Part shown: piece after piece, positions 7,105-58,550 of the stretch | Numbering within the stretch: the stretch's first letter is position 1 | How the letters are laid out: every line of letters begins with the position of its first letter | Assembly (NCBI GenBank): GCA_965235115.1 | Contig: OZ249444.1 | Span: 2,046,001-2,110,000 of the forward strand | Source: Laetmonice hystrix | Taxonomy: Eukaryota | DNA: 64,000 nucleotides | Direction: 5' to 3' | Translations under genes and position numbers: made by a program | Notes under the pieces: model-generated | What the model was told of the DNA's origin: nothing | What the model saw: only the letters and a program-made list of their open reading frames with translations | The model's database searches: none

Positions 7105-7969
7105 TGTGATGTGTGTGAGGTAGAATTCCTCAGTCTAGGTTAATTCTAATCCGCCAGGTGGCGTTGTGGTCTGATGGTAGTTAAATGTCCCGCCAGAGGG
7201 AGCTTGAGTGGGAGGTTCTGGGTTTTCTCAGTGAGACCAGAAAGTTCCCGTAATAGTTTTAAATTAGAAAGTTCTCAAACAACTAGAATTATCCAGTGAC
7301 AGTCGAACATTCTACAACGAGAAGGTTCTTAAACTGAAGGTATATAAGCTGGTAGAACTGATGATGCGGGGAGACTTGCGTTGAGATCTAACAGAGAGTG
7401 TAGTTTAGTGACTACGTTGGAACAAGACCTGATTGACGATTGTGAGACTGTATTATCGCTCAGTGTGGGATTACGAAAGCTGTCATATTTGGGCGTTGAG
7501 CTGATACGTGGACAGTAGACTATAGCCTAGGGCTACGGGTCTTCAATTCGTGTGCTACTGAAGTTGGCGACTTCAATAGGAAGATTTATCCACGGATTCC
7601 TGGAGTACGTATCTGAACTTGTGCTGGGGACATTGTGCTTGTGAAAACCACGGAGGAAAACCACTGGAACTTTATGTGAACTTTGGATTTACGTGTGGAC
7701 ATTGGGCTTGTGAAATCCACGGAGGAAATCAACTAGAACTTTATTCGAACTCTGATTTGGATTTACGTATGGACTGAGAACGTTCTGGAATTGCAGACGG
7801 GACAATAGACCACAATAGATGGTAGGAACATTCCAGAAGGTAAAACACCGAGTTTTATGATTGTGAATCAGACCTTATTTTGTCATCATCGTGTAACTGT
7901 GAGGATTCATTAAATTGTTTAAAATTAAATTCTGGGTGTTTGTCATCTACTGCCGTTGGCCACGTAACA
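7105..7969 (+). repeat. Gypsy B 5' LTR
   Basis: TGTGATG...CGTAACA; TATATAA at 7341-7347; internal ~69-bp duplication at about 7630-7770. Confidence 0.96.
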
Positions 7970-7974
7970 TAAAT

Positions 7975-7991
7975 TGGGGGCTTGTCCGGGA
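7975..7991 (+). promoter_or_regulatory. Primer-binding site, tRNA-Pro
   Basis: TGGGGGCTTGTCCGGGA, one mismatch to the canonical tRNA-Pro PBS TGGGGGCTCGTCCGGGA. Confidence 0.9.
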
Positions 7992-8069
7992 ACTGAGCAA
8001 ATTTGGCACATTGAGCCATTATTTTAGAAATTGTCCACCATCTTTGTTTCAAGAACATTCTTACTCAAA

Positions 8070-9521
8070 ATGTCAGCGGCCGTAGATGATTTCGTGGCAG
8101 CGCCAACTGTAGATGAGTTGAGGAAGCTTAAAAAGTCTGAGTTGTTAGCAGTTGCTGAGAAATGTGAGTTAGAGGAGGTGAACAAAGGGATGACAAAGGC
8201 AGTTCTCCAAGGAAAAATAGCTGAGTTCTATCATGAAGAAGATGTCTTTACAACAGATGAGTTAAATCAGTTTGTGGACATTGGAAAAGGGAAATCCATG
8301 TCAGACATGGAATTCAAACTCAAGATGGCAGAATTAGCAGAGCAAGAGAAACAAAGACAGTTTGAATTAGAGAAGTTAGAGAAATTCAAAGAGAAGGAAC
8401 AGGTTGAGTTAGCCAAATTGAAAGAGAAAGAGCAGTTTGAGTTAGAGGAGAAAGAGAAACAAAGACAGTTTGAGTTAGAGGAGAAAGAGAAACAAAGACA
8501 GTTTGAGTTAGCAGAGAAAGAGAAACAAAGACAGTTCGAGTTAGACAAAGAAAAACTTGAGTTAGCCAAGTTAAAAGAGAAAGAACAGTTTGAAGCAGAG
8601 GAGAAAGAGAGACAGCGACAGTTTGAGTTAGAAAAACTTAGGTTGAGTGGAGGAGGAAGAAGCCATTCAGATGACACCCAGAGGTTTGCTGCTAGTCGAG
8701 AAGTTAGGTTAGTTCCTCCATTTGATGAGAAAGAAGTAGACAAGTACTTTCAACATTTTGAAAAGGTAGCTGAGAGTCTGGAATGGCCACCGAAATACTG
8801 GCCTCTGATGTTGCAGAGTGTTATCAAAGGGAGAGCACAACAGGCATATTCTGCATTGTCGGTTCAGGATTCCTCAGATTATGAGATTGTCAAGAAAGCC
8901 ATTTTGACGGCATATGAGTTAGTTCCAGAAGCTTACAGGCAAAAGTTTAGAAATTGGAAAAAGAGGGACGGTCAGACTTATGTGGAGTTTGCTCATGACA
9001 AGGAGGTGTTCTTTGAACGTTGGTGCAACTCAATGTCGGTTGACAAGGACTTTGACAAGTTGAAGGATTTGATGTTGGTTGAGGAGTTCAAGTGCTGTGT
9101 CAACGATGATATTGAGACCTATCTTAATGAGAGAGAAGCCATTACTCCACAGAAAGCTGCAAAATTGGCAGATCATTATGCACTCACTCATAAGTCCAGA
9201 TTTGGGTCCAGTGAGAAGTCTCAGTTCTACAAGAAGAAAGACAATGGTACCAAACCAAGTTTCCAGAGAAATGACAGCAGAAACAAGAGCAATGTTGGTA
9301 AAAGTGAGTCCAAGGACAAATCTGTCAGCCCCACATGCAATTATTGCAAGAAACCAGGTCATGTTATGTCGGATTGTTGGGTTCTTAAGAGAAGGAAAGA
9401 AAAAGTCACAGTTCCAAATGCTCTAGTTAGATCTTGTATAGAGGCACCTATTGTGAAAGCTAGTTCTGTGGATCCACCTAGTTTTTTTGAGGCTAAGGAG
9501 CCAGATATGTCTACCTTGTAA
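8070..9521 (+). CDS. Gypsy B Gag (coiled-coil EKEKQRQFEL repeats, capsid-like domain, CCHC knuckle)
   Basis: ATG at 8070; VRLVPPFDEKEVDKYFQHFEK; CNYCKKPGHVMSDC. A 1-bp deletion relative to copy D (tctacc vs tctgacc) creates the terminal stop. Confidence 0.9.
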   Translation: MSAAVDDFVAAPTVDELRKLKKSELLAVAEKCELEEVNKGMTKAVLQGKIAEFYHEEDVFTTDELNQFVDIGKGKSMSDMEFKLKMAELAEQEKQRQFELEKLEKFKEKEQVELAKLKEKEQFELEEKEKQRQFELEEKEKQRQFELAEKEKQRQFELDKEKLELAKLKEKEQFEAEEKERQRQFELEKLRLSGGGRSHSDDTQRFAASREVRLVPPFDEKEVDKYFQHFEKVAESLEWPPKYWPLMLQSVIKGRAQQAYSALSVQDSSDYEIVKKAILTAYELVPEAYRQKFRNWKKRDGQTYVEFAHDKEVFFERWCNSMSVDKDFDKLKDLMLVEEFKCCVNDDIETYLNEREAITPQKAAKLADHYALTHKSRFGSSEKSQFYKKKDNGTKPSFQRNDSRNKSNVGKSESKDKSVSPTCNYCKKPGHVMSDCWVLKRRKEKVTVPNALVRSCIEAPIVKASSVDPPSFFEAKEPDMSTL

Positions 9522-11865
9522 GGGAGGAGTTTCTTCCATTTGTGTCAGAGGGATTTGTTTCTCTGAGTGAGAATTCGTCCTCTGTACCCATTAGGATTCT
9601 TCGAGACACTGGAGCATCTCAGTCACTTTTGTTAGAGGACGCGTTGGCCTTATGTGATGAGTCGGCTACTGGTGATTTCCTACTTGTTCAGGGTATTGAA
9701 GGGAGAACGGTTACTGTACCTCTGCACTCTGTGTATTTAAAGTCGGACTTAGTTACAGGACAGGTGAGGGTAGGAACTAGATCAAGTCTTCCGATTAAGG
9801 GTGTTTCTTTGTTGCTGGGAAACGACCTGGCTGGTGGAAAAGTTGTCCCCTCGATCCAGATGACGTCTCAGCCGAGCACTGAGGAAGTTAGTGAGGATCC
9901 CACTTTGTTTCCTTCGTGTGCAGTGACTCGGGCTATGGCCAAAAGGGCTAAGGAAGAGGAGGATTATGTGCAGTCTAGCACTTGTCAACGTCATGATGCA
10001 GGGAAAACTGGTTGTGACTCGTTAGGGTCTAAGGAGACTTCTACCTTTGATGATCTTGCAGACACGTTTTTTGGTTCTGTTTTCGAGCAGGATTCTGGTG
10101 ATAGGTCTGGTGATCTTGTAGTGTCTGATGATTTGCCGTTGTCCAGGGATCAGCTGATTAAGGAACAGATTGGTGATCCTGAAGTTGGTGAATTGAGGGA
10201 CAAGGCTCTCCCCAAGGAGGAGATTGAGAAAGTGCCGGTTGGTTACTATCTTGAAAATGGAGTGTTGATGAGGAAATGGCGACCCCCTGATAGTCCGGCT
10301 AACGAAGAGTGGGCAGTTGTTCGTCAAGTTGTAGTTCCTAGCGTTTATAGGAAGGATATATTGGCCATGGCACATAGTTTGCCATTAGGAGGTCATCTTG
10401 GTGTTAACAAGACAGTTATAACAAGATCTCAAAGCAGTTCTTCTGGCCAGGGTTGAGGAAGGATGTGTCCACCTTTTGTCGTACTTGTCATACTTGTCAG
10501 GTTGTTGGTAAACACACGTCAGATCCTCCTGTGGCTCCATTACAACCCATTCCAGCTCTGGGAGAACCATTTTCCAGGGTGATCATAGACTGTGTAGGTC
10601 CGTTGCCCAAGACTAGGTCTGGGAATCAATATTTGCTGACGATAATGTGTGCGGCTACAAGGTTTCCTGAGGCAGTCCCTCTGAAGACTATGATGAGAGC
10701 GTATTGTGAAGACAACGAGAAGGACTGGGATGAAGGTGTTCATCTGTTGTTGTTCGCTGCCAGGGAGGCAGTTCAGGAGTCCACTGGTTTTAGTCCTTTT
10801 GAGTAGGTGTTTGGCCATGAGGTTCGAGGCCCATTGGCTTTGTTGAGTGCTCAGTGGCAGGATTCAGAAACACATGTCAGTCTGTTGGATTACGTGGTGA
10901 AGTTTAAGGAAAGGGTGCATAAGGCATGTTCAATGGCTAAGGATAATTTGGAGTCTAGTCAAAGAAAGATGAAAACTTGGTATGATAGAAAGGCTAGATC
11001 TAGAGTGTTCCAGCCAGGACAGAAAGTGTTGGTGTTGTTCCCCCTTCAATCCAACCCGTTGCAGGCTAGGTTTCATGGGCCGTACGAAATCCACTCGAAG
11101 GTGAATAACCTCAATTACGTTGTCAAGACCCCAGATAGGAGAAAACCTACACAACTTTGCCATGTCAACATGTTAAAGCCCTATCATGACAGGTCTGTGA
11201 GTGTTGTAACCGTTGTTGAGGATGGTGTTGAGAGTTCAGAGGACAGTGTTGTATGTCAGGAGGAGGAACCAAAGGTCAAGCCTGATATTCTTCCTTGTAA
11301 GCTGTCCAATTCAGAGGTTTTGCAACACTTTGATGTGAAAGTTGCCCATTTAGAGCCTGAGAAACAAGACCAAATAAAAGAGTTGGTATTTAGGTATCAA
11401 GGTCTGTTTCCTGATGTTCCAAAGAGGACATCAGTGACTGTTCATGATGTTGATGTTGGTGATGCCACACCCATTAAACAACATCCCTATCGGATGAACC
11501 CAGAAAAATGTAAGATTGCTGAAAGTGAGGTCAAATATATGTTGGAGCATGACATTATTCAACCATCCCACTCAAATTGGAGTCCACCCTGTGTATTGGT
11601 TCCTAAGCCTGATGGTATTACAAGGTTTTGTACAGATTATAGAAAGGTGAATGCAGTCAGTAAGACTGATGTATTTCCTATGCCTAGAGTGGATGATTGC
11701 ATCAACAAAGTGGATAAACCAAGGTACCTCACAAAGATTGATTGTAAGATGAAGAATAAGAATAGAAGATTGCTAAACTGGAGATTAAGCACATCAAAGG
11801 TAAAGATAATGTCATTGCCGATTGTTTATCTCGATGTTAAGCTATATGCCAAGTTGGTTGTGTAA
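9522..11865 (+). pseudogene. Gypsy B pol: protease, integrase, then truncated RT fused to the RNase H tail
   Basis: ILRDTGASQSLL; HSLPLGGH...CRTC; IIDCVGPLP; FHGPY; PIKQHPYR...RFCTDYRKVN. Contains frameshifts, an in-frame TAG at 10804-10806 and large deletions. Confidence 0.92.
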
Positions 11866-11955
11866 TATTTGCCACATGTGTGTTATAACTGTGTAAAGAT
11901 TACATGGTATATAAAAATTTTTACAGGTAAAAATTTTTCTTTCCTAGAAGGGAGG

Positions 11956-12820: not shown

Positions 12821-12824
12821 GAAG

Positions 12825-26858: not shown

Positions 26859-27727
26859 TGTGACGTAGCCAACGGCAGTAGATGACAAACATCCAGAATT
26901 TTATTTTGAACAATTTAATGAATCCTCACAGTTACACAATGATGACAAAATAAGGTCTGATTCACAATCATAAAACTCAGTGTTTTACCTTCTGGAATGT
27001 TCCTACCATCTATTGTGGTCTATTGTCCCGTCCGCAATTCCAGAACGTTCTCAGTCCATACGCAAATCCAAATCAGAGTTCGAATAAAGTTCCAGTTTGT
27101 TTCCTCCGTGGATTTCACAAGCACAATGCCAACACGTAAATTCAAAGTTCACATAAAGTTCCAGTGGTTTTCCTCCGTGGTTTTCACAAGCACAATGTCC
27201 ACAGCACAAGTTCAAATACACACTCCAGGAATCCGTGGATAAATCTTCCTGTTGAAGTCGCCAACTTCAGTAGCACACGAATTGAAGACCCGTAGCCCTA
27301 GGCTATAGTCTACTGTCCACGTACAGCTCCAGGCCCAAATACGACAGCTTTTGTAATCCCACACTGAGCGATAATGCACTATCTCACAATCGTCAATCAG
27401 GTCTTGTTCCAACGTAGTCGTAGTCACTAAACTACACTCTCTATTAGATCTCAACGCAAGTCTCCCCACATCATCAGTTCTACCAGCTTATATACCTTCA
27501 GTTTAAGAACCTTCTCGTTGTAGAATGTTTGTCTGTCACTGGATAATTCTAGTTGTTTGAGAACTTTCTGGTTTCCGACTATTACGGGAACTTTCTGGTC
27601 TCACTGTGAAAACCTGGAACCTCCAACTTAAGCTCCCTCTGGCGGAACATTTAACTACCAGACCACAGCGCCACCTGGCGGATTAGAACTATCCTACACT
27701 GAGGAATTCTACCTCACACACATCACA
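26859..27727 (-). repeat. Gypsy D 3' LTR
   Basis: Reverse complement of the B-type LTR; direct repeat of 58551-59419. Confidence 0.96.
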
Positions 27728-27849
27728 CCTCCCCTCTAGGAAAGAAAAATTTTTACCTGTAAAAAAATTTATATACTATGTAATCTTTACACAGTTATAA
27801 CACACATATGACTGGCAAATATTACACAACCAACTTGGTGTATAATAGC

Positions 27850-28150
27850 TTAACATCGAGACAAACAATCGGCAATACCATTATCTTTACCTTTGATGTG
27901 CTTAATTTCAAGATTGAACTCTTGCAAAATCAAACTCCAGTTTAGCAACCTCCTATTCTTATTTTTCATCTTACACAGAAACACCAAAGGATTATGATCC
28001 GTGTATAGAGTGATGGGTTTCTGACCAGTACAAATGTACACATCGAAATGTTGCAATGCCAAAATCAAAGCCAACAGCTCCTTCTCGATAGTAGAGTAAT
28101 TCTTCTGATGTTGATTGAACTTCTTTGAGAAGTAAGCAATTGGATGTTCT
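27850..28150 (-). pseudogene. Gypsy D RNase H C-terminus
   Basis: EHPIAYFSKKF...EKELLALILAL...YTDHNPL...IADCLSR. Confidence 0.93.
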
Positions 28151-28163
28151 AAGCTTACCATTT

Positions 28164-30315
28164 ATGTTGTTATCAGATAGAGACATTATTGCTGAATTTA
28201 AAGGCGTTTCTTATCCTATGAAGCAAAATGAATACGATCTTTTGAAATGGATTAATTATGCAGACTCTGAAATAGAAGAACATCTCCCCTTAAATGAGAT
28301 TGACCCTGATACGAATTGGTATACTACCAGCCAAATACAATCGACAAAATGCATTTCCCTAGATACATATATTGAATTAAGTGCAAGCTGGAATGATGCC
28401 GGGTTAACAACAAATGGTATGTTTTATATGAATATTAGAAGCCTTCCTAAACATTACAATGAATTACAAACCCTTTTATTGCAAAATAACTTTAGAATGC
28501 TGACCGTATATTGCAGAAAACCGGTTAAAGAATGAAAACGTAAATTTGTACAACTTAGTAGGATACAACAGTGTAAATGACTGCAGGAAAAAGAAAATAG
28601 GTGGAGGTGTCTCCATCATGATCAGAGAAGATTTATCATTTCACTGCATCGATCAACTATCCCTTATGGACTGTGACATTGAATCGATTTGTGTTAAATT
28701 GGAAGGAAACAATGTAGTGAATGATACAAACATTTGTTGTATTTATAGACCACCCCAGGGTAATATTCAAGAGTTTGCAAACAAGTTCAATTATATACTA
28801 GTGAAACTCTCTAAACATCCAACATATATTTTCGGTGACTTCAATATAGACCTCAAGAGAAGATCAGAATCTTCTGAAACTTTGCTAAACACTGGGTTCT
28901 CATATGGATTTCACCCTATTATCGATAAACCGACCAGAGTTCATAAACTTTCTAAGACAGTCATTGATAACATTTTTACAAATTCTTATGAGAGAATCTC
29001 GGATCACTATGTACTAGCTAGTGATGTTTCTGATCATTACCCATTATTAGTAACTATAGTAATTACTGAACCCAGTAAGAAGCAAATCAAACTGAAGAGA
29101 AAAATAAATAAGAAAAATGTCGAGACCTTTATTCAGACTATTCAATCCTATAAATTTACTGAAATCTTAAATATGGAAACATCGTCTGAAGCCTACAGCA
29201 TCCTACACCAAATTATAACCAAAACAACAAATCATTTCCACTTGCTAAACCTACATCCGCTTACAAAGATAGACTTCCATGGGTGGATATTAAACTTTAA
29301 AAAATAATCAAATTAAAAAACCAAATGTATATTACATCCCAAAAATATCCAACAATTGAGAATCAAGATAACTATAAGCGCCTCAAATCACTAGTAAATA
29401 AACAATTAAAAATATCTAAAAGAAACTATTACAGAAATCTATTATTAGAAGTGGGACAAAATATGAAGAAACAATGGCAAATACTTAAGGAAATCACAGG
29501 ACGTGACAAAACTAAAGATTGCCCCACTTTCTACATCTCAGAGGATGGGTTTCGTGAAGAGGATCACTTGGCTATCGCTGAAAATTTTAACACATATTTC
29601 TCACAAATTGACGAAAATCTTGCTCGCAAAATCCCATCTGAAAATATCGACGTTACTACTTACTTACACAATCCAACACAAGCAAGTATTTTTCTAAACC
29701 CCACAACTCCTAGTGAAATTCAAAAAATAATTTTAAATCTAAAAGACACGGCTGGGGGATGGGACAATTTATCAACAAAGCTTATCACCAATATTCTTGA
29801 TCACATTCTAGTCCCACTCACACATATAATCAATCTTACCCTTGAAACTGGAGTATTTCCATCTGAATTGAAAATTGCAAAAATTAAGCCGATCTTTAAA
29901 GCCGACAACAAACACCTGTACACCAATTATAGACCAATATCATTGCTACCAACCTTCTCCAAGGTCTTTGAAAAGATCATATACACCCGACTTATAAACT
30001 TCTTTGACAAACACAAAATAATATACTCCAGACAATTCGGGTCTCGTTCATCGTACTCAACCGAATTAGCGCTAAACCATTTAGTTAATGATCTTGCTAA
30101 AGCTCAAGCCAGTCAACTTAACACAATAGGAATATTTCTAGATTTCTCTAAGGCTTTTGATACGGTAAACTTTGACATTTTATTGACTAAGCTAAATCAC
30201 TACGGAATTAGAGGAAAACCATTAAAGCTGATGGAGTCGTACTTACGCGAGCGACTACAACATACCATGTATCAAAATTCGATTTCAAAGAACAAACCTA
30301 TCACCACAGGGGTAC
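28164..30315 (+). pseudogene. LINE ORF2 part 1 (endonuclease and RT N-half)
   Basis: ATG at 28164; frameshifts near 28500 and 29270; ends ...PITTGV at the Gypsy E junction. Confidence 0.9.
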
Positions 30316-31144
30316 TATCATCAAGTATAATTTAATGTTTTCTATATTTTATTCTTAATCTGTTTTATCCTTAATATTTCATGTTTCCACGTTTGGTGGA
30401 TATATATATATGTATCTTCTCTGCAGCAGACATCGTAATATTTTGAGAGTGGTATGCAGAGGCCACACACAGGTCAGAAATATGTAGACCTATCTCTATT
30501 TTAATCTTGGGAGGATGTGGAGGGGATATACGGTGGCTCAACGGAAAATCCCCAGCATGAGATCCCTGGTCCCCTAACACCTACCCCAGTCCTTATATGG
30601 TAGGGACATCAACTGACCAGTGGTCACCTCTGACGTGATTCCACGTATTTTGGGGGTCGGCCGCTGGTCCTCCCTTTGCCCCTCCAGATAAGGGCATGAT
30701 CTAGGAAACCACACCCCCTCTCACCGTGGGCAGCACGTGGGTGCAGGGCAGGGTTCATACTTGACCATGCGCTGTACCCACAGTATATAAGTCCCACAAA
30801 ATCCTACCCAGACAGATAGACCATAGACCAGATAGACACAGATAGACACACATAGACATTCAGATACGATACATAGGAGACACCCAGTCACCATCACCAT
30901 CCACGTCAGCCACCAGCCACTCCACTCCTCCGGTAAGTCAGCTTCTCACATTGTTGACGGTCACACTTGTACTGGGCATTTATACAACCTCTCGTAAGCT
31001 CTACTCGTATTAAATTATTCTCTCTAACTCACGGATCCTACGTTATTATTCCCCTCCTATTATTAATTGTGTCGTTCCCGCTTGCTCACGCTAGTCTCCC
31101 CCCACAACACGAAACCACCCATACACCGGTTAAGCGGGACGACA
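30316..31144 (+). repeat. Gypsy E 5' LTR (TA...CA termini)
   Basis: Direct repeat of 45861-46689; TATATAA at 30784-30790; GTAAGT donor-like site at 30933-30938. Confidence 0.95.
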
Positions 31145-31196
31145 GTTGGTGGAGAGCAACCCGGGTATTCGACTCCCATAACATATTCAAAATTTT

Positions 31197-32594
31197 ATGT
31201 CAAAAACTATTTCCACCCCCAGTACGAGTAGACCCGATACTGCATGTCCAGCACATGCTACGAGGTCCAGAAAGCCGGAGTTAGTTGGACAGTGGTCTGT
31301 GTCGGCTAGACAGGTGACTGATCCTCCTCCATCTCCTCCATCTACTCCATCTCCGCCTCCAACTCCACCGCCTCCATCACCACCTCCTGAGAGAATGGCT
31401 GAACAACCCGCCTGCCCGCCCTACACACAAACCTTTAACGGCTATTCAAGCAAGGATGGAGAAAATTTCATAGACAATTTTGATACCTACTGCAGCCACT
31501 ACAACTGCACGGCTAAAGAGAAGACGAATCTTGTGTCTCTGTCGTTGACAGAGTTGGCCAGGGACTGGCTCAAATCATTTCTTGAGAGAGAGGTCGCTTA
31601 TGGTACTGAGGAGGCCAAGTGGGAGGCCCTAAAACGTGAATTTGGGGAACGGTTTAGGCATTCAGCAGACGATGTGCTCTTAGGGGAGCGTGCACTGGCC
31701 AGTCGGACACAGTTACCTAACGAGCAAGTAACCGCCTATATTGATATCATGCAGCTTGCTGCCCGCCACTGCCCAGAAGTAACTGAGCCTCAATTAGTGC
31801 GGCTGATACTTGGAGGACTACGGCCAAAGATTAGGTCTCTGGTCATGACGCAACGCCCCCAGACTGTGGCCGATCTATATACGGCATCAGCCAACTGTAG
31901 CACACACAGCTACAGTGGCCCCGTAACCCAGGCGGCACCCCTGAACCTGAGACCGGCAGCACAACCCTTCACCACCCAGTCAGCAGCCCCACCCTTCACC
32001 ACCCAGTCAGCGGTTACATCATCACCCTCATCAACGGCCAGACTACCAGCACCCTCAGCCCTGCACTCCATCAGTAACCTACTGTATGGACAAACAACAA
32101 CAGACGTCACACCAGTAGATTTCACCCCATCCCAGCAGGACCAAACATCGTCAGCTCTACAGAGATTGACAGAAATGATGGAGAAATTAACAACAGCAGT
32201 CAACACACAAGTCAATAGCCATCAACACAACAGCCATCAACACTCCTACAGATCGACATCGCCATCACACAATAGAAACCCATCACCGCGCTACCATCAG
32301 AGGGGAAGATCGCCCTCACCCAGGTCATCAGGCAACAGTTACTGTGGCAACTGTGGAGACACCAGTTGCAGAGGTAGGCCCAACTGTCGCGCCAGAGGTA
32401 TGACTTGTCATCATTGTGGCAGAATAGGACATGTAATTTCTATGTGCAGGAGTAGGAAGAGTGGCATGCTTGGGCAAACATCCCTCAGGTACACCCCTCC
32501 CAGCCGCGGCAGAGCAAATGTTCAGTTTATGGCACCATCACACCCCCAAAATAACCAGTATACTACCCAGCGCCACCCCTCACACTGGCATTGA
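31197..32594 (+). CDS. Gypsy E Gag (Pro-rich N-terminus, capsid-like domain, CCHC knuckle)
   Basis: Open 465-aa ORF; FNG...ENFIDNF; RTQLPNEQVTAY; CHHCGRIGHVISMC. Confidence 0.9.
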   Translation: MSKTISTPSTSRPDTACPAHATRSRKPELVGQWSVSARQVTDPPPSPPSTPSPPPTPPPPSPPPERMAEQPACPPYTQTFNGYSSKDGENFIDNFDTYCSHYNCTAKEKTNLVSLSLTELARDWLKSFLEREVAYGTEEAKWEALKREFGERFRHSADDVLLGERALASRTQLPNEQVTAYIDIMQLAARHCPEVTEPQLVRLILGGLRPKIRSLVMTQRPQTVADLYTASANCSTHSYSGPVTQAAPLNLRPAAQPFTTQSAAPPFTTQSAVTSSPSSTARLPAPSALHSISNLLYGQTTTDVTPVDFTPSQQDQTSSALQRLTEMMEKLTTAVNTQVNSHQHNSHQHSYRSTSPSHNRNPSPRYHQRGRSPSPRSSGNSYCGNCGDTSCRGRPNCRARGMTCHHCGRIGHVISMCRSRKSGMLGQTSLRYTPPSRGRANVQFMAPSHPQNNQYTTQRHPSHWH

Positions 32595-35500
32595 TGTGGC
32601 TCATCTGTTCACAATAGGGTTCATTTGAACAGGGAGAATACCACAGATAGTTTGCTGGCAAAGAAGTTATTCAATGATTATGAAAGAATAGATCAAGTCA
32701 AAACATTATTTTCCTCTAAAGACTCCAACCTTTCAAAATCTTCAGACATTATATACAGTTCTCAAACCAATCAGTCAGTTGTCAAACAAATACAACCCAA
32801 GGCTAGGTTACCCCCATCTCAAAACAAGAAAATAAATAGTGCTACTCTGAGAATTTTATCCAATCAGGACACTAATACAGATTTACCAGATTCAGATCAT
32901 AAAGAAATAACAGTACCACGCATCATGCAAGTCAATTCTAACACAGATAGCGAGTTTGGTAATCTTATCAGACTCAAGGTAGGCAACATTTCAACCCTTG
33001 CATTGGTTGATTCAGGTGCACGTGTCTCATGCATATCAAATAATTTCTTACGCAATATGCCTACAACACCAAAACAATTAATGCCTTTATTTGATGCTGT
33101 CGTTGGTGTTGGTGGTGAAGAACATAAAGTTCTTAGTTGCATTGAATTAAAGTTAAACATTCAAGGCAATCTTGTTACCCAGACCTTCCATGTTTTGGAG
33201 GGACATCATTCCGTTATCTTAGGACTGGATTTCCTCAATAGGTACAATATTCAACTGAACTTTGAAGAAGGTAGCATGATTTTTCCAACAGGGAAATGTA
33301 TACCTCTTCAGCATCCACCACGACGGACAACAGTAGCTAGGACTGTTAGTACTATCCATATATTGCCAAGGTCATAACGAACAATAACAGTTGCTTTCTC
33401 TAAACCTCAACACAGCCTTATCTATATGGAACCAGTATTTTCACTTCAGGAATTCCACCCAGATTTAGTTGTACCTCCAACTGTGGATGATCCCAAGGGA
33501 CGCTTTACACAGTGTAAACTTTTAAATCACTCAGACAATTTAATTATTCTTCCAAAATTCACAGCTATTGGATTAGCGTCTACCTTATTCCAACCTGAAA
33601 TATTATACAATAGTGAGGATGCCTTCAACGATGAGCTCTCAGGCCTTTATAAGGGAATGACTGAGTCTCAACTTCCAAAGCAAGACATTGATTTTGATGT
33701 CTCAAACTCCAACCTATCTCCTGAAAACAAATCAGAGCTTTTAGAATTTTTAAAGGCACATAGAAAGGCATTTGCAGTTGACATCAGTGAATTAGGAACA
33801 GTAAAGGTAGCACCCCATACGATAGACACAGGAGATTCACCTCCTGTCTCTCAACGGTTCTACAGAGCCAATCCAATCGTCAGGGAGGAAATAGATAAAC
33901 AGATTGACCTACTTTTAAAACACAACGTTATTGAACCTTCCACCTCCATGTGGAGATCTCTTATTGTTATGGTTCGAAAAAGTGACTCTTCCTACTGTTT
34001 TGCCATTGACTTTCGTAAACTAAACCAAGTTACTAAGAAAATTTCGTTTCCCTTAGCTCGAGTCGAGGATGTTTGGGATTCTATTGGCCAACGGAAGAGT
34101 GCTATTTATAGCCTTCTCGATTTAAATTCGGGATTCTGGCAGGTAAAACTCGATCCAGCAACAAAACACAAAACAGGATTCGTTACCCAACATCGCCAAT
34201 TTCAATTTCGCAAGTTACCATTCGGTTTGTGCAATGCCCCAGCTACTTTTCAGAAAACCATGACTGAAGTGCTTGGAGATACTCTCTATGACTGTGCCTT
34301 CGTCTACGTCGATGACATAATCGTCCACTCGCCTGACTTTAAAACACATTTAAAAGACCTTGAACGAGTTTTCAAACGCCTTGAAGAAGCTGGTATAACT
34401 CTGAAACCGAGTAAATGCAAATTTGGTGAGAATTCTGTCAAATATCTAGGTCACATTCTATCAAAGGATGGAATTCGCCCAAACCCAGACAAAAGCAGAA
34501 TTGTTAAAGCGATCCGAAACCGCCACTAGCAATAGGGCCCATGGATAACCATGGTATAGTGCCTTTTACCTGCCACCATCTAATTCCCACAAAGTCTGTG
34601 TGTTAAAAGTAATCCCCGATAGAAACTGACAGTTGCCCGTTTGCTCACGGCGTCCATCTTGCCGAAATTCACTGCCGTGAGACCTTAAAAAATGGCGTCC
34701 CTAGAGCCTACCCCATTCCCCCATCACTGTGTTGGTCAACCATCTTCACGGACACTATGTACAATAATGGTTACCGGTGAACTCGGACCATGGTTATCTC
34801 GGCCCATGTCGATTACATGACTTCATGTCCCCTTCATGCGTGCCCTGTCCCAGGCTCCATGCCTCATCCGACACCCGAGTCAGGTGGTCAAGTCAACAAC
34901 GGGGCAGCACGGTGCTCCCGACGGGCGTGCACTGGTGGTTGGACGGGGCCAGACATGCCAATTTGGTCGATCGACGTAGTGAAAAATCTCTTACCGGGCG
35001 CTTAAACGAACAGAAATTCGTCGCAATACCCTCCAACGCATGAAATGATGGCTGAAAGCTATTATTTATACGGAGAATTGTCAACTAGAGAATGAAATGT
35101 ACACTGGTTGGGTCATGGATCGAGTCTGACAGTAGTGACAGACTACGGCAGTCTACGGCCGGGGACATGGCGTGCACTGCCACTGTCAAAGCGTCGGGCT
35201 ACCGTTCAGCTAGCACACCCAGGCATATCTTCACGAAGGATCAGCACCAAGTCAGTGGTGTGGTTAGACCTGCTGATCGGTCTCCTAGTACTATGACACG
35301 GATAATCTTACTCGCAGCTCTCAGTCTAGACTCTCTGACTACCTTGTATCCTCACCCGATCTGACAGCTAGTCGAAACTCGCGGCTCTGGCGACGTCACA
35401 CTTCCGGGTGACCTGACTGTTTTTGATTGGCTGAATCAATCTCCCATGTGATAATGTGATGTAAAATGGCGCCGAGTTCATTTCTCGGCTAGAGGTACGG

Positions 35501-38112
35501 TACTCGTAGTTTAAGGTTGGCATTCTCGTTTATGTAAAACCTATTGACCTGCATTTATTGCTGATGTTATTCTTTATTGTATAAGGCATATGGGAAGGTA
35601 TAAGGTAGCTGGATTGTTGCATTTGGCTTTAAAGATTTTGTTACACCTACCAATCCTCGCCATGTCAGAAAATTTTTAGGCTTATGCAATTATTATAGGC
35701 GATTCATAAAAGATTTTGGGAAACTTCGTGCACCATTGAATGATCTCTTGATCAAGAACACACCATTCAGCTGGACAGAAGAGTGTGCCCACTCCTTCCA
35801 GACACTGAAAGATAGACTGACAGGCCCAGTTATGTTATGTTTCCCTGACCCCACACGTAAGTACACCATTACCTGTGACGCCAGTGGCACTGGCCTAGGT
35901 TTTATTTTATCTCAGCAGGACAAACATGGTATTGACCGTGTACTGGCCTATGGTGGCAGATCACTGAGACGTGATGAGAAAGCATATTCCATCACTGAAC
36001 GTGAAGGATTAGCAGTGATTGAAGGAATCAGAGAATACAGGACATATTTAATCGGATCTGATTTTGATATTGTTACCGACCACAAAGCTTTGACCTACAT
36101 AAAAGCAAATGAAGGAGGCACTGGCAGATTAGCCAGATGGGCTCTAGAACTTGCGGGTTACAATTATAATGTTGTTTTCCGTAAGGGCGCTGAAAATGTT
36201 AATGCAGAATGTTCTTTCTCGTACTGATGACATCACTACAGACATTAAAGCAAAACTATCCCATTCCGTTGCATGTCAAACTGATTCTTTCCAACCTGGA
36301 GAGATGGAAACCGTTAATGTTGATGAAATTATTCATCCACACTTAGCTGCTCTGAGTGAACATCTTTTTCAACCAGATCCTATGCCTAACCTATCAACTC
36401 AAATTGCTGCCATAGACATCAATGCAGAAATTGATGCACAAGAACAAACCCAGTTACAACTCACTTCTGAAGCTGATATAAAAAGGCAACAACAAACTGG
36501 AAAAACAGGAAAGATTCTAAAGTATCTTCTGACCAATCAAAACAAACCAGAAGGCTACACAGACGCCAACCTAGCCAAGTTTAAGGTACAAGATGGTCTA
36601 TTGTATCATCAATTGTATCTTGGTGTAGATCCTACAGGCACAGAAATAATTAAATTACAGTTAGTTATACCAGAAGAAGGAAAAATCTCTCCTGGAGACT
36701 TAAGATCTAGTGTTATGGAACACTATCACAACAATCTCTTGGGGGGATGTCATCAAGGTTTTGACAGAACCTATGATGCCATAAGGCGAAAGTATTTTTG
36801 GTTCAATATGTATACGCATGTTCAAGATTTGGTCAACAGTTGTGCCAGCTGCCAACAAGCAAAGACCCACAGACACTCTCGGCCAGCACCTCTCAAGCCT
36901 ATGCCTATTGTTGGTCGTTTTGAACGATGGCATATTGATTTCTTGGGTCCACTTCACGAAAGTTCTGGCAACCATAAATACATCCTTTTAATACTTGATT
37001 CATTTTCACGTTGGCCAGAAGCCTTTCCACTTGAGTCAAGTGATGCAAAAACAGTTGCAAGGGTATTGTATGAAGAAATATTCACCCGCTATGGCGCTCC
37101 AAAAACTCTTGTATCAGATAGAGGAAAACAATTCCTATCCATGCTTGTGGCTTCCTTGTGTGAACTTTTCAAAGTTAAACGTATTCACACATCCCCTTAC
37201 CACCCACAAACGAATGCAACCTGTGAACGTTTTAATGCAGTAATTGCACAAGGATTGAGAGCATATGTGGACACAACTCAATCAGATTGGCATACATATT
37301 TGCCAGGAATTCTCATGAGCTACCGTGCAACACCAGCTGCTCGATCAACAGGAATGTCCCCATTCTATACACTCTTTGGTGAAGATATGTCTCTTCCCAT
37401 TGACAGAATAGTGGAACCTAAACCGAATCTTCCCACAACTGTACAGAATTACTTGACAAAAACACTGGGACACATCCGTCGAATTCATGAACTTGCAAAA
37501 AGTAACATTGAGAAACATCAAACTCAGTACAAAAGTTACTATGATAAAGATACAGAGCCTCCACGATTCAAAGTCAACCAATTGGTGTGGCTTAGAGACC
37601 AGAAGGTCCCAGTTGGTTTGTCTTCCAAACTACACAAACCATGGAAAGGACCATACTATATAGAACAGGTCCATGACAATAATACGTACACTCTGCGTAA
37701 CATGTCATCCTACAAACCATTACCAAATCGTCAGAATGGTAACAGGCTGAAACCATGTGTTACTTCAGAACCTCCACCTGAGACAATGGAACCTGACAAT
37801 AACCAGACCCCTCCACAGTCAAATACCACAACTGTACCCCCAAACATTCTGAGTGACCCAACTTCCAATGTAACACATGATGTTATGAATGATCCTAATC
37901 CACCCAAACCAATTAAGATCCTTAAAGCAGGATATCAAAATGGGAAAAAGGTTTATAAAGTTCGATTAGAAGGACAGTCACCACAATGGCTGCTTCCAAA
38001 CGATGTTCCACCAAACATGATAGCAGATTTTCATGCTAAGTTCACAAACACTGGAAAAGCGAAAAAGTTCAAACAGAAATCCTTGTTACAGGAATGTAGA
38101 GTTTCACAATAA
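32595..38112 (+). pseudogene. Gypsy E pol (PR-RT-RH-IN)
   Basis: ALVDSGA; LDLNSGFWQ...YVDD; TCDASGTG; HHxxxH...CASC; IDFLGP...VSDRGKQF; GPY. Contains an in-frame stop at 33375-33377, an insertion at 34508-35628 and a +1 frameshift near 36210. Confidence 0.93.
34508..35628. mobile_element. 1121-bp non-autonomous DNA element at a TTAA target, AG...CT ends (Kolobok-like)
   Basis: TTAA at 34504-34507 and 35629-35632. Removing it restores RIVK|DFVTPTNPRHVRKFLGLCNYYRRF in frame. TIRs are weak (AGCGATCCGAAAC vs AGCCAAATGCAAC). Confidence 0.8.
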
Positions 38113-38170
38113 TATGATAATAGTTCAGGCTAATTAAATGGCCCAGAATAATGATCCAAAAACATTATAA

Positions 38171-38842
38171 ATGGTAATGTGGATCGGCCTTCCTCATAAC
38201 TGCACAAGGGAGAGGACTTGTAGAAAGTCAACACTCGAGACAAGTGGTGTAAGACGGAAATTTTTTTTCTCACCATTATCATTTTCAACAATTAGGGCTG
38301 GTTCCCTTCACAACATTGAAAACTCATATTCCACTTTCTTCTGCTTGCTCTCCAGAGTGGCTATCAGCGGCCGCGATGGCACGACTGCCCACATCGTCAT
38401 CGTCCCGCAGTCGAGGATTTTTATGGCTTTTGATTCTTTGTTTCTGTGGCTATACATGCAGCCTGGCAACCTCATCGGTATAGAATTTTGTGATAGGGAT
38501 AAAAGTATCACAATACCGATTGTGTCAGTACCTTTTTGCCCCAAGTTCTATAATTTTACTGCTGCTAGCGTCTTAAAACAACTGGAAATCCAGGGTACTC
38601 TTCTCCCAAAGATTCTTATTACTTGGGATAACTTAAAGGTTACAAACTTGTTAACGGATGAGACCATTGAAATGCCAACTGTAATAACCATCTCACCCCT
38701 TTCTGCCTACCGCCTTAGGAAACTTGTTCGCTCACCTTATGAGGCCCATTTCTTGATGGACCATGGGCGTAGATCCGTCTATATACCACTGTGTGCCCAA
38801 ACATGTAATGCTATGTATCCTGAACTGCCACGTTCAACTTAG
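38171..38842 (+). CDS. Gypsy E third ORF (unknown function, possibly a truncated env-position ORF)
   Basis: 223-aa ORF downstream of the integrase stop and upstream of the 3' LTR. The C-terminal ~140 aa look protein-like (LITWDNL...MPTVITISPLSAYRLRKLV...Y). Confidence 0.55.
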   Translation: MVMWIGLPHNCTRERTCRKSTLETSGVRRKFFFSPLSFSTIRAGSLHNIENSYSTFFCLLSRVAISGRDGTTAHIVIVPQSRIFMAFDSLFLWLYMQPGNLIGIEFCDRDKSITIPIVSVPFCPKFYNFTAASVLKQLEIQGTLLPKILITWDNLKVTNLLTDETIEMPTVITISPLSAYRLRKLVRSPYEAHFLMDHGRRSVYIPLCAQTCNAMYPELPRST

Positions 38843-38978
38843 ATATTTTTAGGTTTTAAGGTATTTTAGCTTTTGTATTTGCCACTGTTGACGAGTCATA
38901 TTTCAATTATGTGTAATGCGACAGAGGGTCTGCCTCTGGTATTTTGGTGTTGTTTTTTTTTTCTTCTTCAAGTGTCAC

Positions 38979-41900
38979 TGTCGGAACCCATTCCTCTACT
39001 CCCAGTGTATCATTTGGCCGCTAGGTGCTAGTCTGTTATATCCCGCTAGGCGGCGCTTTTGTCCGATAGTTTTGCCATTAAAAGCTCTAAACCGGAAGCG
39101 GTGAACACGTTGCCGGACAACTCAACAATCGGATGTGTTTGCCTTCTTTTCTAACGTTGGAGTGGACATTTGGTGCCGTCAAGACCAGGATTCCGATCTT
39201 ACTATCTGGATTTATCTAACTATTCTGCTGTGGTACATCAGACTATATTTTGCGGACTACTCCAACGTGCATTCGTGTGAACTATGGACATGATGGATCA
39301 GGGTGAACATCTCAAACGGCGACGTGCCGGCCATAAGGGCTTCATAACCAGACAGATCAACAACGCTCAGGACGGAAATCAGGGAGAGGTCCAGCTAAGT
39401 GACTTGATTAACTCCATACGCGTCCATCTACGAACTGTCAATGAACTGTCAGACGAACTATTGAACGTCTGTGACGCAAACTCTGTAGAAACTGAGGTCT
39501 TAAACTCGTCAGAATATGACTTTGAGGTCAACTCCCAAATCAAACAGCTGGAACGAAAACTACATGAACTTAGCATCAGTGATGTCCCAGGTCAGCTGAA
39601 TCGGCCCACCGTTATCAACACGGCAACGTCAACCACGGTAACACCATCTAATGTGTCCAACTATCTGAATCAGTCAAATCAACTCGTGCCTTCTACATCT
39701 ACTGATGGTGTTACAACTGCAACAACGTCGACAGTCAACACTGTGACATGTACTGGGATGACACCAACTACAACACCTCTGCTGACTGGTCATACCGGAG
39801 GACAACACAGACAGAGTGTGAATCTCGGGGTGAGTTACCAACATTTATCTCCCCCTTCATCGGATGTGGACCCTGCCATAGTTGCCCTGGGTACATCCAT
39901 AGCTGAGTTTGATCCGTTTGCGCCACCACCTCCTCAACAACATACCCCGCTGTCATCAAGTCAGCCTTTACAAGCTCGAAATGTTACTGCATCTACCTAC
40001 AATATTCGGTTACCAAGATTGGAAATGCCAAAATTTGACGGATCGCCGATCAAATGGCAGACGTTTTGGGATTCATATCTTCCAAACATCCACATCAATC
40101 CTCAGATTCATGAGAGTGAGAAGTTCACAAGGCTGCTTGCACTACTAGAAGGTGAAGCTCTTAGCTGTGTTTCTGGATTCTCTATCACGGCAGCCAATTA
40201 TCAAAGAGCAGTTGAGTTGCTGCTCGAGCGCTTCGGACGAGCACATATTGTGATATGTGCACACAATCAAGCACTTGTGTCGATGGGTGCCCCAACAGAA
40301 GATCTTTCATCATTGTCTGCATTTTATGATGAGATGGAGACCCACATTCGAGGCCTGGAGGCACTGGGACAGACCCAAGATCAGCTCGGTACATTGCTGA
40401 TATCAATTATTCTCAGTAAACTGCCACCAAGTGTCATACAGAACATCACTAGAACCAACGGAGGGTCTGACTGGACCTTACGTGCATTGCGCAAAACATT
40501 GTATCGTGAACTAGATATCATGCGTGCTGGAGGGAACTTAGCAGAATCGGCTCATTCTAACTTTGCCCAGTCCTCACAAAGGCTGCACCAGTCATCCAAT
40601 CGAAATAGGAATGGAACAGGAAATCAGAACAGAAAACCCATCAAAAAACGCAATGACACAAACAATACTCAGTGCTGTGCTTTTTGTTCGAATGATCACA
40701 GAGAAACTGAGTGCACTGAAGTCAAGGACGTCACCCGTCGGAACCAGATTGTGCGAGAGAAAGGACTTTGTTTCAATTGTCTAAAGAGCAACCACAAACT
40801 AACTGACTGTAAATCAAAGTACTCGTGTCGGTGCTGTAAACGAAGACACCATTCTTCCTTGTGTCGATCTGGGAATCATGACAATTCTGAGGCAGCCAGC
40901 GCACCTTCCTATGTTGCACCAAGTCAACTTACTGCACAACAAAGGGTTGCTAGCCCCACTTCTGACCCTCAACACATTGGTATCAGTCCTGTAGAATCAA
41001 AGTCCAGTGACAAGCCACAACTACCAAGTCCCAATAACAAAAGTGAAGAAGCCATAAATGTTCTTACTGCTCCGACTACTCAAGGTGTGTTGCTATGTAC
41101 GGCTATAGCGAAAGTTCGATGCGGAAACGAGGTTTGCGAGGCTAAACTGTTGTTCGACCAGGGTGCTCAACGCAGTTTCGTCAGGGAAGAGTTTCTCAGG
41201 AATTTCACAAGCCACATTCCCCGAGAATACGAGAGCATAATGATGTCGGGTATAGAAGACAAGGCAGCCACTTATCGTAGACTACCAAAAGTGAGTTTAA
41301 ACATTGAGACACTAGAAGGAAGTGAGGTGACAGTCAACCCACTCATTTTGAAAGACATAGCTGCACCTTTGTCTGTCAAGAATCGACAGCTGAAACTGTA
41401 TCCCCACTTGGAAAACTTGCAGCTGGCCCATCCAGTAACAAAGGATGGAAAATTTGTCATCGATATACTCATAGCCGCGGACTCATACTGGGACTTAGTT
41501 GATAACCATACAGTAAGAGGCGAAGATGATGGCCCTGTTGCGCTGCAGTCCAAGATTGGTTATCTTATCTCTGGACCATTGAGAACAATGAAGACACACT
41601 GTGACCCTATTCCTGATCAAGTTTATGCAGGCATAACCTTTGCATCTGATCACAGGCCACCTGATGATGAACCAAACTTGGACCAGTTTTGGGAATTAGA
41701 GTCAATAGGAATCACAGGTCAGACTACGGATGATGAAGCACAGGACCAGAAGGCCTATCAAGACAATTGTATTGAGAAAGTCGGCCAACATTACCAGGCA
41801 AAACTACCATGGAGGAGAGTGTTTCCTGACCTACCTACGAACTACACAAACGATCTGACTTGAAGACCAGGAAACTATACGATGCGGTTGTAAAGGAGCA

Positions 41901-44900: not shown

Positions 44901-45426
44901 GAGCTGAACTCCCGCAAAATCCAAACGTGCCACCTAAGACTGAAAAAGTGGACAGTGACTGTTCAAGGCACAGTTCCAGACTAGCGGCTAAACGTGCAAT
45001 GGACAAAATCCAGCAGATTCAGGCTCTTGATGTAACATCAGATTCCGATGACGACCTTTAATTGTTTGAACTGAGAACTCGGTATTGGATTAGCCATGCA
45101 CGATTGTTATTTTGCGTCATTATGGCGTCATACTCGTGCTTTTCATTCTTAAGGAGTATATTGCTTATAATTTTGTATAAGTTCTTTATTAATATTATGT
45201 TGTCCTTATAATGTTCAACTTTGCGCCCCGGGAGAATGTCGGAACCCATTCCTCTACTCCCAGTGTATCATTTGGCCGCTAGGTGCTAGTCTGTTATATC
45301 CCGCTAGGCGGCGCTTTTGTCCGATAGTTTTGCCATTAAAAGCTCTAAACCGGAAGCGGTGAACACGTTGCCGGACAACTCAACAATCGGATGTGTTTGC
45401 CTTCTTTTCTAACGTTGGAGTGGACA
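38979..45426 (+). mobile_element. BEL/Pao LTR retrotransposon F
   Basis: Identical 190-bp LTRs at 38979-39168 and 45237-45426; TSD GTCAC at 38974-38978 and 45427-45431; PBS TGGTGCCGT (tRNA-His-like) at 39171-39179; purine tract at 45230-45236. Confidence 0.97.
39284..45061 (+). pseudogene. BEL/Pao gag-pol polyprotein (near full length, two frame breaks)
   Basis: PKFDGSPIKWQTFWD; triple Cys knuckle CAFC...CFNC...CRCC; LFDQGAQRSF; SDIEKAF...YVDN; HIFVDAS; GLDFSG...SDNA...GGFWERLV. Breaks near 41850 (deletion) and at 42811-42818 (GATC duplication). Confidence 0.95.
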
Positions 45427-45860
45427 GTCACATTTATATTTTGTGACTTCTTCATGTGGACTCCTTACCTTTTGGACTGGACATATATCCACGACAAGTG
45501 TGTTTATTGATAATTTGTGTGCTTTTGTTTTCTTGGTGCAAACCTTTGACCAAGCAAGGTCATAACGAACAATGGACAATTCTCCAGTCGCATACGGACA
45601 TTCGCCAGTTGCCAGCACAACTGTGAACCCTCGGTGGACTATGCCGACTCAAGGACTTCAGTTCCATTTATATATATTATTATTGTATCAATGTGTTTTT
45701 TTAGCTTCGGCTCGAAGCATGGAACATTTAATTTCTTGTGGACTTATAAAATTTTTAAAGGTCTATCTTCAGACCTCTTTGTCATCTGTGAAGGACACAG
45801 TGCAAGATAGTTTTAATGACTTTACGTTCGGAGACCGAACTTTTCTAACAACCGGAGTGA

Positions 45861-46689: not shown

Positions 46690-46693
46690 GTAC

Positions 46694-47382: not shown

Positions 47383-47587
47383 ATGAACATGATAAAACTA
47401 TAGTTTTAACTGTGTATAAATCCAAGGGAGGTGCAGTGCTTCCCGCCGTCGACGCCAGGGGGCAGTCGCGGAGCTGGACCGTTCTAATTCGCGCCACCGG
47501 GGTCAGCACACTCCTCGACACTGCACGGAGCACACGCAATTTTTTGCACGCAATTTTTGGACCTGGACTTTTCCGTGTTTGGACAAG

Positions 47588-48904: not shown

Positions 48905-48958
48905 GATGAGGAGTGCCTGGCCAAGTGTCGGAAACAACTTGAGTGTCTTCCTTATGGT

Positions 48959-58528: not shown

Positions 58529-58545
58529 TCCCGGACGAGCCCCCA
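58529..58545 (-). promoter_or_regulatory. Primer-binding site of D, perfect tRNA-Pro match
   Basis: Minus strand reads TGGGGGCTCGTCCGGGA. Confidence 0.93.
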
Positions 58546-58550
58546 ATTTA

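What the first reader, a model, noticed from the sequence alone, without database searches (positions are those of the whole stretch)
10801..10870. Same in-frame TAG between integrase core and GPY/RT in two independent Gmr1 insertions
Seen: both B (10804-10806) and D (54495-54493, minus) read ...FSPFE-TAG-VFGHEVRGPL, where homologues normally have Leu. The copies have different TSDs, opposite orientation, diagnostic LTR indels and otherwise private lesions, so this stop predates both insertions. Because RT/RH lie downstream in this domain order, the stop would abolish RT. Inference: either a defective lineage has been amplified in trans, or the family uses programmed UAG readthrough inside pol to ration RT. 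I know of no such report for Gmr1. The +4 base is G (as in MLV), and weak pairing (CCATTG...CAGTGG) lies downstream, but I cannot confirm a structure.
Basis: partly seen in the sequence, partly recalled or inferred. Interest (0 to 1): 0.7.

Follow-up and report, generated by a model that had tools for sequence, protein, structure and literature searches.

The report
Shared nonsense mutation in two retrotransposon copies
Two separately inserted copies of a Gmr1-like jumping gene share a stop codon inside their integrase, but every other copy in the genome and 120 relatives from other animals read an amino acid there, so it marks a broken sub-lineage copied with borrowed enzymes, not a programmed readthrough signal.

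Summary
B (10804-10806, +) and D (54495-54493, -) both read FSPFE-TAG-VFGHEVRGPL. They are independent insertions with different 4-bp target duplications (GAAG and ATAT). Integrase lies upstream of RT/RNase H, so the stop cuts off the integrase C-terminal domain, RT and RNase H.

The readthrough idea fails. All 7 other copies in this 627-Mb genome that hold the site read a leucine codon, as do 14 copies of related families. Among the 120 best relatives from other animals, 117 have Leu and 3 have Met. Several Leu-bearing copies keep long open frames across the site (up to 1,606 codons), and their LTR pairs are as alike as B's or more so. The RNA after the stop folds no better than shuffled sequence (z -0.26). 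Changes private to B and D look neutral (downstream N:S 11:5).

The stop replaces a conserved hydrophobic residue late in the integrase core, not a domain boundary. B and D share a sub-lineage haplotype, and at least 9 further copies share one identical ~1-kb integrase deletion. Mobilisation of pol-defective members in trans is therefore already evident in this family.

Best reading: a nonsense mutation inherited from a trans-mobilised defective lineage (about 0.7). Main rival: gene conversion between the two neighbouring copies (about 0.17). This is ordinary.

The parts
7105..7969 (+). Copy B, 5' LTR (TG...CA); GAAG target duplication at 7101-7104
7970..11955 (+). Copy B body: gag with SCAN-like capsid, protease, integrase and the start of RT. 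Broken by a 1-bp deletion at 9512, a 2-bp insertion at 10417-10418, a ~210-bp deletion at 10678/10679 and a ~850-bp deletion after 11743 that removes most of RT and RNase H. Polypurine tract just before 11956.
10804..10806 (+). In-frame TAG in copy B, where all other copies read a Leu codon
11956..12820 (+). Copy B, 3' LTR; GAAG target duplication at 12821-12824
58551..59419 (-). Copy D, 5' LTR; ATAT target duplication at 59420-59423
52877..58550 (-). Copy D body, first part: gag (interrupted by a private ~1-kb insert at 57539-56507), protease, integrase, RT and the start of RNase H. His replaces the first catalytic Asp (54921); 1-bp deletion near 54259.
54493..54495 (-). In-frame TAG in copy D, same codon as in B
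54748..54750 (-). Second in-frame TAG in D (other copies read a Gln codon), shared only with the copy on contig 21. B has this stretch deleted.
28152..52876 (.). 24.7-kb block of nested insertions that splits copy D inside RNase H. It holds further LTR pairs at 47380-47545/52082-52247, 30303-30602/45848-46147 and 38979-39168/45237-45426.
26859..28151 (-). Copy D, last part of the body (28151-27728) and 3' LTR (27727-26859); ATAT target duplication at 26855-26858
9104..9149 (+). Haplotype patch P1: 7 changes in 46 bp inside the SCAN-like capsid region. Shared by B, D (56404-56359) and integrase-deleted copies on other contigs (three in full, one at 5 of the 7 sites).

Best explanation
The TAG is an ordinary nonsense mutation. 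It sits at a conserved leucine codon, codon 966 of the 1,606-codon gag-pol frame seen in an uninterrupted copy, late in the integrase core region. It arose once in a sub-lineage of a Gmr1-like LTR retrotransposon. RNA carrying it could not make the integrase C-terminal domain, RT or RNase H. That RNA was nevertheless packaged, reverse-transcribed and integrated at least twice, giving D first and B later, using proteins supplied by intact relatives. Template switching between co-packaged RNAs explains why the LTRs of B and D are not each other's closest relatives. After insertion both copies decayed neutrally.

Shown: the stop is derived and confined to B and D; the two insertions are independent; Leu-bearing copies have open frames; an integrase-deleted derivative has been amplified. 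Inferred: the stop predates both insertions, and mobilisation was in trans.
For: All 7 other copies of the family that hold the site (two on contig 4, and one each on contigs 12, 11, 29, 5 and 21) read TTG. So do 13 copies of a family 70-75% identical in DNA, and one more distant copy reads CTT.

Of the 120 best relatives from fish, shark, hemichordates, echinoderms, molluscs and a sponge, 117 have Leu and 3 have Met. Ty3 integrase has Ile and PFV integrase has Leu at the aligned position.

Leu-bearing copies keep open frames across the site: 1,606 codons (contig 12), 911 and 939 codons. Their LTR pairs differ by 0.9% (contig 4) and 1.8% (contig 11), against 1.7% for B and 3.7% for D.

B and D have different target duplications.

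B and D share the P1 haplotype, the TAG and two sites at 11376/11402. Together these give 94/94 support for a B+D clade in the body. P1 is also found in integrase-deleted copies on contigs 10, 12, 18 and partly 1, so it is a lineage marker and not a private B-D patch.

At least 9 copies on 6 contigs (1, 6, 10, 12, 18, 19) share one identical deletion junction. It removes about 1,004 bp, covering most of the integrase and the TAG site. This shows that pol-defective members of the family are mobilised in trans.

Truly private changes look neutral. B has N:S of 12:6 upstream and 6:3 downstream. D has 12:3 plus one stop upstream and 5:2 downstream in the well-compared part. The open contig-12 copy has 4:10.

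A permutation test finds no unusually long concordant tract between B and D (p 0.42).
Against: B and D lie only 44 kb apart, which favours a distance-dependent process such as gene conversion.

Their LTRs are not sisters. D's LTRs group with the contig-11 copy at 98/99 support, so recombination has to be added.

Without P1 and the TAG codon the body tree is a star, and B+D is neither supported nor rejected (p-AU 0.27).

The two sites at 11376/11402 are also variable in other copies. The TAG is therefore the only change exclusive to B and D.

The integrase-deleted P1 copies cannot be scored for the TAG.

No read-level confirmation of the TAG was possible.
Confidence: 0.7

Rival explanations
1. 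Ectopic gene conversion. The stop arose by neutral decay in one copy after it had inserted, and was copied into the other copy, 44 kb away in inverted orientation, by non-allelic gene conversion.
For: The only two TAG copies among 9 that hold the site are neighbours in one 64-kb window. The LTR tree does not make them sisters. A 257-bp stretch around the stop (10783-11039) has no B-D difference.
Against: That stretch is almost invariant in the whole family: B is 99.4% identical to the contig-12 and contig-4 copies there and 99.1% to D. The permutation test for a concordant tract is not significant (p 0.42). The P1 marker that B and D also share occurs in copies on other contigs, so they are related by descent at least in gag. 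Four family copies lie in the stretch 2.0-3.0 Mb along contig 10, so co-location is partly an insertion or retention bias.
Confidence: 0.17
2. Independent recurrence. The same T-to-A change hit the same codon separately in B and D.
For: Other pairs of copies also share 1-4 exclusive sites, so some homoplasy or reticulation exists in the family.
Against: From the private-change counts, about 0.2 identical coincidences are expected over the whole body, and far fewer at one given site (my arithmetic). The change is a transversion outside any CpG.
Confidence: 0.04
3. Programmed or tolerated UAG readthrough. The TAG-bearing sub-lineage makes a little full-length Pol by stop suppression and so remains partly autonomous.
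For: The stop is UAG followed by G, which is the stop and following base of the murine leukaemia virus gag-pol readthrough site (my knowledge). Two independent insertions carry it.
Against: The stop is absent from every other copy and from related families and species. It replaces a conserved hydrophobic residue late in the integrase core region, not a domain junction. The 97 nt from the stop onward fold no better than shuffles (z -0.26; 75 of 200 shuffles fold as well), and no Rfam family reaches its threshold. The identical downstream sequence is present in the Leu copies. Private changes downstream look neutral (11 N: 5 S). B and D carry many further frame-breaking lesions.
Confidence: 0.03

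Closest known systems
Gmr1-like Ty3/gypsy LTR retrotransposons (first described in Atlantic cod)
   Same: Integrase lies upstream of RT/RNase H (PMC8220671). The layout is SCAN-like capsid, then protease, integrase, RT-RNase H (bioRxiv 10.1101/2025.03.03.638093). The uninterrupted copy shows exactly this order in one long frame.
   Different: Nothing unusual for the family as a whole. B and D are decayed members carrying a nonsense mutation.
Non-autonomous or defective LTR retrotransposon lineages mobilised in trans (for example LARD and TRIM elements of plants, and defective retroviral genomes rescued by helpers; from general knowledge)
   Same: An inactivating lesion is shared by independent insertions. 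Open-frame relatives exist in the same genome. A deletion derivative with one identical junction has been amplified to at least 9 copies.
   Different: Here one lesion is a single stop codon in an otherwise full-length template, seen in only two copies. Mobilisation has not been shown experimentally.
Murine leukaemia virus type gag-pol UAG readthrough
   Same: A UAG followed by G, upstream of RT (my knowledge for MLV).
   Different: In MLV the stop is conserved, lies at the gag-pol junction, and is followed by a spacer and a pseudoknot. Here it is not conserved, lies inside the integrase, and has no supported structure.

Membership tests
Gmr1-like clade of Ty3/gypsy | Integrase domain upstream of reverse transcriptase | tested here: met
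   In the uninterrupted copy, Pfam places Integrase_H2C2 at 740-796, rve at 817-912, the SH3-like C-terminal domain at 1044-1093, RVT_1 at 1232-1390 and RNase H at 1453-1585. B and D show the same order.
Gmr1-like clade of Ty3/gypsy | Capsid C-terminal domain of SCAN type | tested here: met
   PF02023 SCAN, E 2.8e-9, residues 270-359. The relatives found carry the same domain.
Gmr1-like clade of Ty3/gypsy | Phylogenetic grouping with the reference Gmr1 element | not tested
   No reference Gmr1 sequence was at hand. The best solved-structure match is Ty3 integrase.
Programmed stop-codon readthrough element | Stop conserved among family members and related elements | tested here: not met
   TAG occurs only in B and D. 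The 7 other copies, 14 copies of related families and 120 relatives from other species read a sense codon.
Programmed stop-codon readthrough element | Stimulatory RNA structure or motif just after the stop | tested here: not met
   MFE -26.9 kcal/mol against a shuffle mean of -26.1 (z -0.26). No Rfam match reaches threshold.
Programmed stop-codon readthrough element | Purifying selection on the coding sequence downstream in stop-bearing lineages | tested here: not met
   Truly private changes downstream are 6 N: 3 S in B and 5 N: 2 S in D. The open contig-12 copy shows 4:10 over its whole aligned body. Power is low.
Programmed stop-codon readthrough element | Measured readthrough | not testable with these tools
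   Needs a reporter assay or ribosome profiling.
Trans-mobilised defective LTR retrotransposon lineage | Same inactivating lesion in independent insertions | tested here: met
   TAG is present in B (GAAG duplication) and D (ATAT duplication).
Trans-mobilised defective LTR retrotransposon lineage | Possible helpers: relatives with open gag-pol frames in the same genome | tested here: met
   Open frames of 1,606, 939 and 911 codons across the site in Leu-bearing copies.
Trans-mobilised defective LTR retrotransposon lineage | Independent sign of trans-mobilisation in the family | tested here: met
   At least 9 copies on 6 contigs share one identical ~1,004-bp integrase deletion junction.
Trans-mobilised defective LTR retrotransposon lineage | Lesion predates the insertions | tested here: inconclusive
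   The shared P1, TAG and 11376/11402 haplotype favours descent. Gene conversion between the neighbouring copies is not excluded.

The most novel reading that the evidence does not exclude
The TAG-bearing sub-lineage is kept partly autonomous by low-level suppression of the UAG inside the integrase. That would be a pol-internal readthrough that rations the integrase C-terminal domain, RT and RNase H in a Gmr1-like element.
Probability: 0.03. Interest if true: 0.55.

Novelty: new member of a known kind. Interest (0 to 1): 0.15.

Why it matters
It matters little beyond annotation. The result removes a candidate for a new recoding signal. It also documents a Gmr1-like family with a point-mutant sub-lineage and an amplified integrase-deletion sub-lineage that apparently live off intact relatives. 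Reticulate sharing of variants points to frequent template switching. This is useful for dating and classifying repeats in this genome, and as a caution: a stop shared by two insertions does not by itself indicate recoding.

Tried and rejected
1. Segmental duplication of B and D. Rejected: they have different target duplications and flanks.

2. D as the direct parent of B. Rejected: B and D LTRs differ by 5.4-6.2% in substitutions, and D's LTRs group with the contig-11 copy.

3. A recent conversion tract around the stop. The 257-bp identical stretch first looked suggestive. The stretch is nearly invariant family-wide, and the permutation test gives p 0.42.

4. An apparent excess of synonymous changes downstream of the stop. 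B showed 6:7, and D showed 10 S: 1 N in the RT part. This came from variants also present in outgroup copies, and from a part where only one sister clade was available for comparison. The truly private changes look neutral.

5. I briefly thought the family had Cys in place of the second catalytic Asp. This was a misreading. The catalytic Asp is the one in the SDQGSNF motif, with Glu 36 residues further on, and both are present. The Cys sits at a non-catalytic position where Ty3 and PFV happen to have Asp. HIV-1 has His there (from memory).

6. Read-level check of the TAG. Only three runs of one sample, held as Logan contigs, contain the stretch. They collapse the repeat to the majority T at 10805 and can neither confirm nor refute the TAG in B or D.

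7. Earlier notes of this scan held nothing on this place or family.

Full report
**Observation**

The sequence is as described. Copy B reads ...TTT GAG TAG GTG TTT GGC... with TAG at 10804-10806. The reverse strand of copy D reads the same with TAG at 54495-54493. Both translate to FSPFE*VFGHEVRGPL.

B is bounded by LTRs at 7105-7969 and 11956-12820 and flanked by GAAG on both sides. D starts with an LTR at 59419-58551 and ends with one at 27727-26859, flanked by ATAT on both sides. D is therefore a 32.6-kb composite. Its body runs 58550-52877, is split by a 24.7-kb block of nested insertions, and resumes at 28151. B and D are thus independent insertions, in opposite orientation, with different target duplications.

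**What the element is**

Pfam on the pieces of B and D, and on an uninterrupted copy from contig 12, gives this order:
- SCAN-like capsid
- zinc knuckle
- integrase zinc-binding domain
- rve core
- SH3-like integrase C-terminal domain
- RT
- RNase H

This is the Gmr1-like order, with integrase ahead of RT (PMC8220671; bioRxiv 10.1101/2025.03.03.638093). In the uninterrupted copy the whole of gag-pol is one frame of 1,606 codons, and the codon in question is number 966. That places it after the Pfam rve match (817-912) and before the SH3-like domain (1044-1093). In alignments to solved structures it matches Ile of Ty3 integrase and Leu of PFV integrase in the motif that follows the catalytic Glu. 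It is a conserved hydrophobic position inside the integrase fold, not a junction between proteins. A stop here removes the integrase C-terminal domain, RT and RNase H.

**The decisive comparison**

A search of the window's own genome (627 Mb, 35 contigs) with 311 bp around the stop found every stretch that holds the site. I read the codon in each.
- Of the nine copies of this family, only B and D read TAG.
- The two copies on contig 4 and the copies on contigs 12, 11, 29, 5 and 21 all read TTG.
- Thirteen copies of a family 70-75% identical in DNA read TTG, and one more distant copy reads CTT.
- Among the 120 best protein relatives from other animals, 117 have Leu and 3 have Met at this position. 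These come from pufferfish, sawfish, acorn worms, brittle star, sea cucumbers, pearl oyster, scallop and a sponge.

Predicted proteins cannot show stops, so this last set shows only what the norm is. The genomic copies carry no such bias.

Leu-bearing copies keep long open frames through the site: 1,606, 939 and 911 codons. Their LTR pairs differ by 0.9% (contig 4) and 1.8% (contig 11), against 1.7% for B and 3.7% for D. The stop is therefore a derived change limited to B and D. It is not a feature of the family.

**Readthrough signals**

The 97 nt from the stop onward fold to -26.9 kcal/mol. Dinucleotide shuffles average -26.1 (z -0.26), and 75 of 200 shuffles fold at least as well. No Rfam family comes near its threshold in 10600-11100. 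The downstream sequence is the same in the Leu copies, so nothing there is tied to the stop.

Changes found in B or D and in no other copy look neutral:

| Copy | Upstream N:S | Downstream N:S |
|---|---|---|
| B | 12:6 | 6:3 |
| D | 12:3 plus one stop | 5:2 (well-compared part) |
| Contig-12 copy (open frame) | 4:10 over the whole aligned body | |
| Unweighted neutral expectation | 3.4:1 | |

Both B and D also carry frame-breaking lesions of their own.

**How two insertions came to share the stop**

In an alignment of the body, B and D share 11 derived sites:
- seven clustered at 9104-9149 (patch P1)
- the stop itself
- 11376 and 11402 (and, by the strict count, one further site)

These give a B+D clade with 94/94 support. 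Without P1 and the stop codon the tree is a star, and B+D is neither supported nor rejected.

Searching the genome with P1 showed that its haplotype is also carried by four further copies on contigs 10, 12, 1 (partly) and 18. P1 is therefore a lineage marker, and B and D belong to that lineage by descent.

Those four copies and at least five others share one identical internal deletion. It is about 1,004 bp, with the same two breakpoints, and has 66-73-bp tandem repeats at the junction. It removes most of the integrase, including the site of the stop. Nine copies on six contigs with one junction can only have arisen by copying after the deletion. Pol-defective members of this family have therefore been mobilised by proteins made elsewhere. 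That is direct precedent for the same fate of a TAG-bearing template.

Variants are shared in a reticulate way:
- B shares 4 exclusive sites with the contig-12 copy.
- D shares 2 with the contig-21 copy, one of them a second in-frame stop at 54750-54748.
- D's LTRs group with the contig-11 copy at 98/99 support, not with B.
- The nearest neighbour of B changes along the element.

This pattern fits template switching between co-packaged RNAs, which is what one expects if defective RNAs travel with helper RNAs.

**The main rival**

The main rival is non-allelic gene conversion between B and D after insertion. The two TAG copies are only 44 kb apart, and the TAG is the only change exclusive to them. 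Three results weigh against this:
- The identical 257 bp around the stop is a stretch that hardly varies in any copy.
- A permutation test for an unusually long concordant tract is not significant (p 0.42).
- The 2.0-3.0 Mb stretch of contig 10 holds four copies of the family, so co-location is partly an insertion or retention bias.

I put gene conversion at about 0.17, independent recurrence at 0.04 and readthrough at 0.03.

**Limits**

- The TAG could not be checked in reads. The only public runs that hold the stretch come from one sample and are kept as contigs that collapse the repeat to the majority base.
- Grouping with the reference Gmr1 element was not tested.
- Further copies seen could not be fetched.
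Copies were only compared with one another.

**Verdict**

The recoding interpretation is not supported. What is there is a nonsense mutation marking a defective sub-lineage of a Gmr1-like retrotransposon, in a family that demonstrably amplifies pol-defective members. This is an ordinary finding.

Noticed in passing
L038, L039, L040, L041, L044, L045, L046, L049, L051 (contigs 10, 12, 1, 18, 6, 19 of the same genome): At least nine copies share one identical ~1,004-bp internal deletion that removes most of the integrase, with 66-73-bp tandem repeats at the junction. This is an amplified non-autonomous derivative of the family.
   Followed up: partly
window 54748-54750 (-) and L036 (contig 21 copy): A second in-frame TAG, where other copies read a Gln codon, lies 85 codons upstream of the first. 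It is shared only by D and a copy on another contig. It is either another inherited stop or a recurrent C-to-T change.
   Followed up: partly
window 9104-9149 (B) and 56404-56359 (D): Seven changes in 46 bp inside the SCAN-like capsid region, at least six of them amino-acid changes (K/N, S/T, D/N, K/R, D/E, V/I). They define a haplotype shared by B, D and several integrase-deleted copies. The patch looks imported by recombination from a diverged relative.
   Followed up: partly
LTRs 7105-7969, 11956-12820, 58551-59419, 26859-27727 versus bodies: The LTR tree and the body tree disagree. D's LTRs group with the contig-11 copy (98/99), and the body rejects that pairing (p-AU 0.0005). LTRs also differ far more between copies (up to 9%) than bodies do (2-3%). 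The family appears to recombine often.
   Followed up: partly
window 28152-52876: A 24.7-kb nest of other LTR elements is inserted in D's RNase H region. LTR pairs lie at 47380-47545/52082-52247, 30303-30602/45848-46147 and 38979-39168/45237-45426, and long open frames at 39284-45061. None was analysed.
   Followed up: no
window 7975-7991 (B) and the matching place after D's 5' LTR: The primer-binding site TGGGGGCTYGTCCGGGA starts 5 nt after the LTR. From memory it matches the 3' end of tRNA-Pro, as in murine leukaemia virus. Not tested here.
   Followed up: no
window 18606-19722 and 22224-22837; N run 21686-21858: Two tandem-repeat arrays (units of about 247/76 bp and about 70 bp) lie on either side of a 173-base run of N. 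The gap was left untouched.
   Followed up: no
window 56507-57539 (-): A ~1-kb insert private to D interrupts gag and contains short tandem repeats (about 16-48-bp and 82-bp offsets). Its origin was not determined.
   Followed up: no
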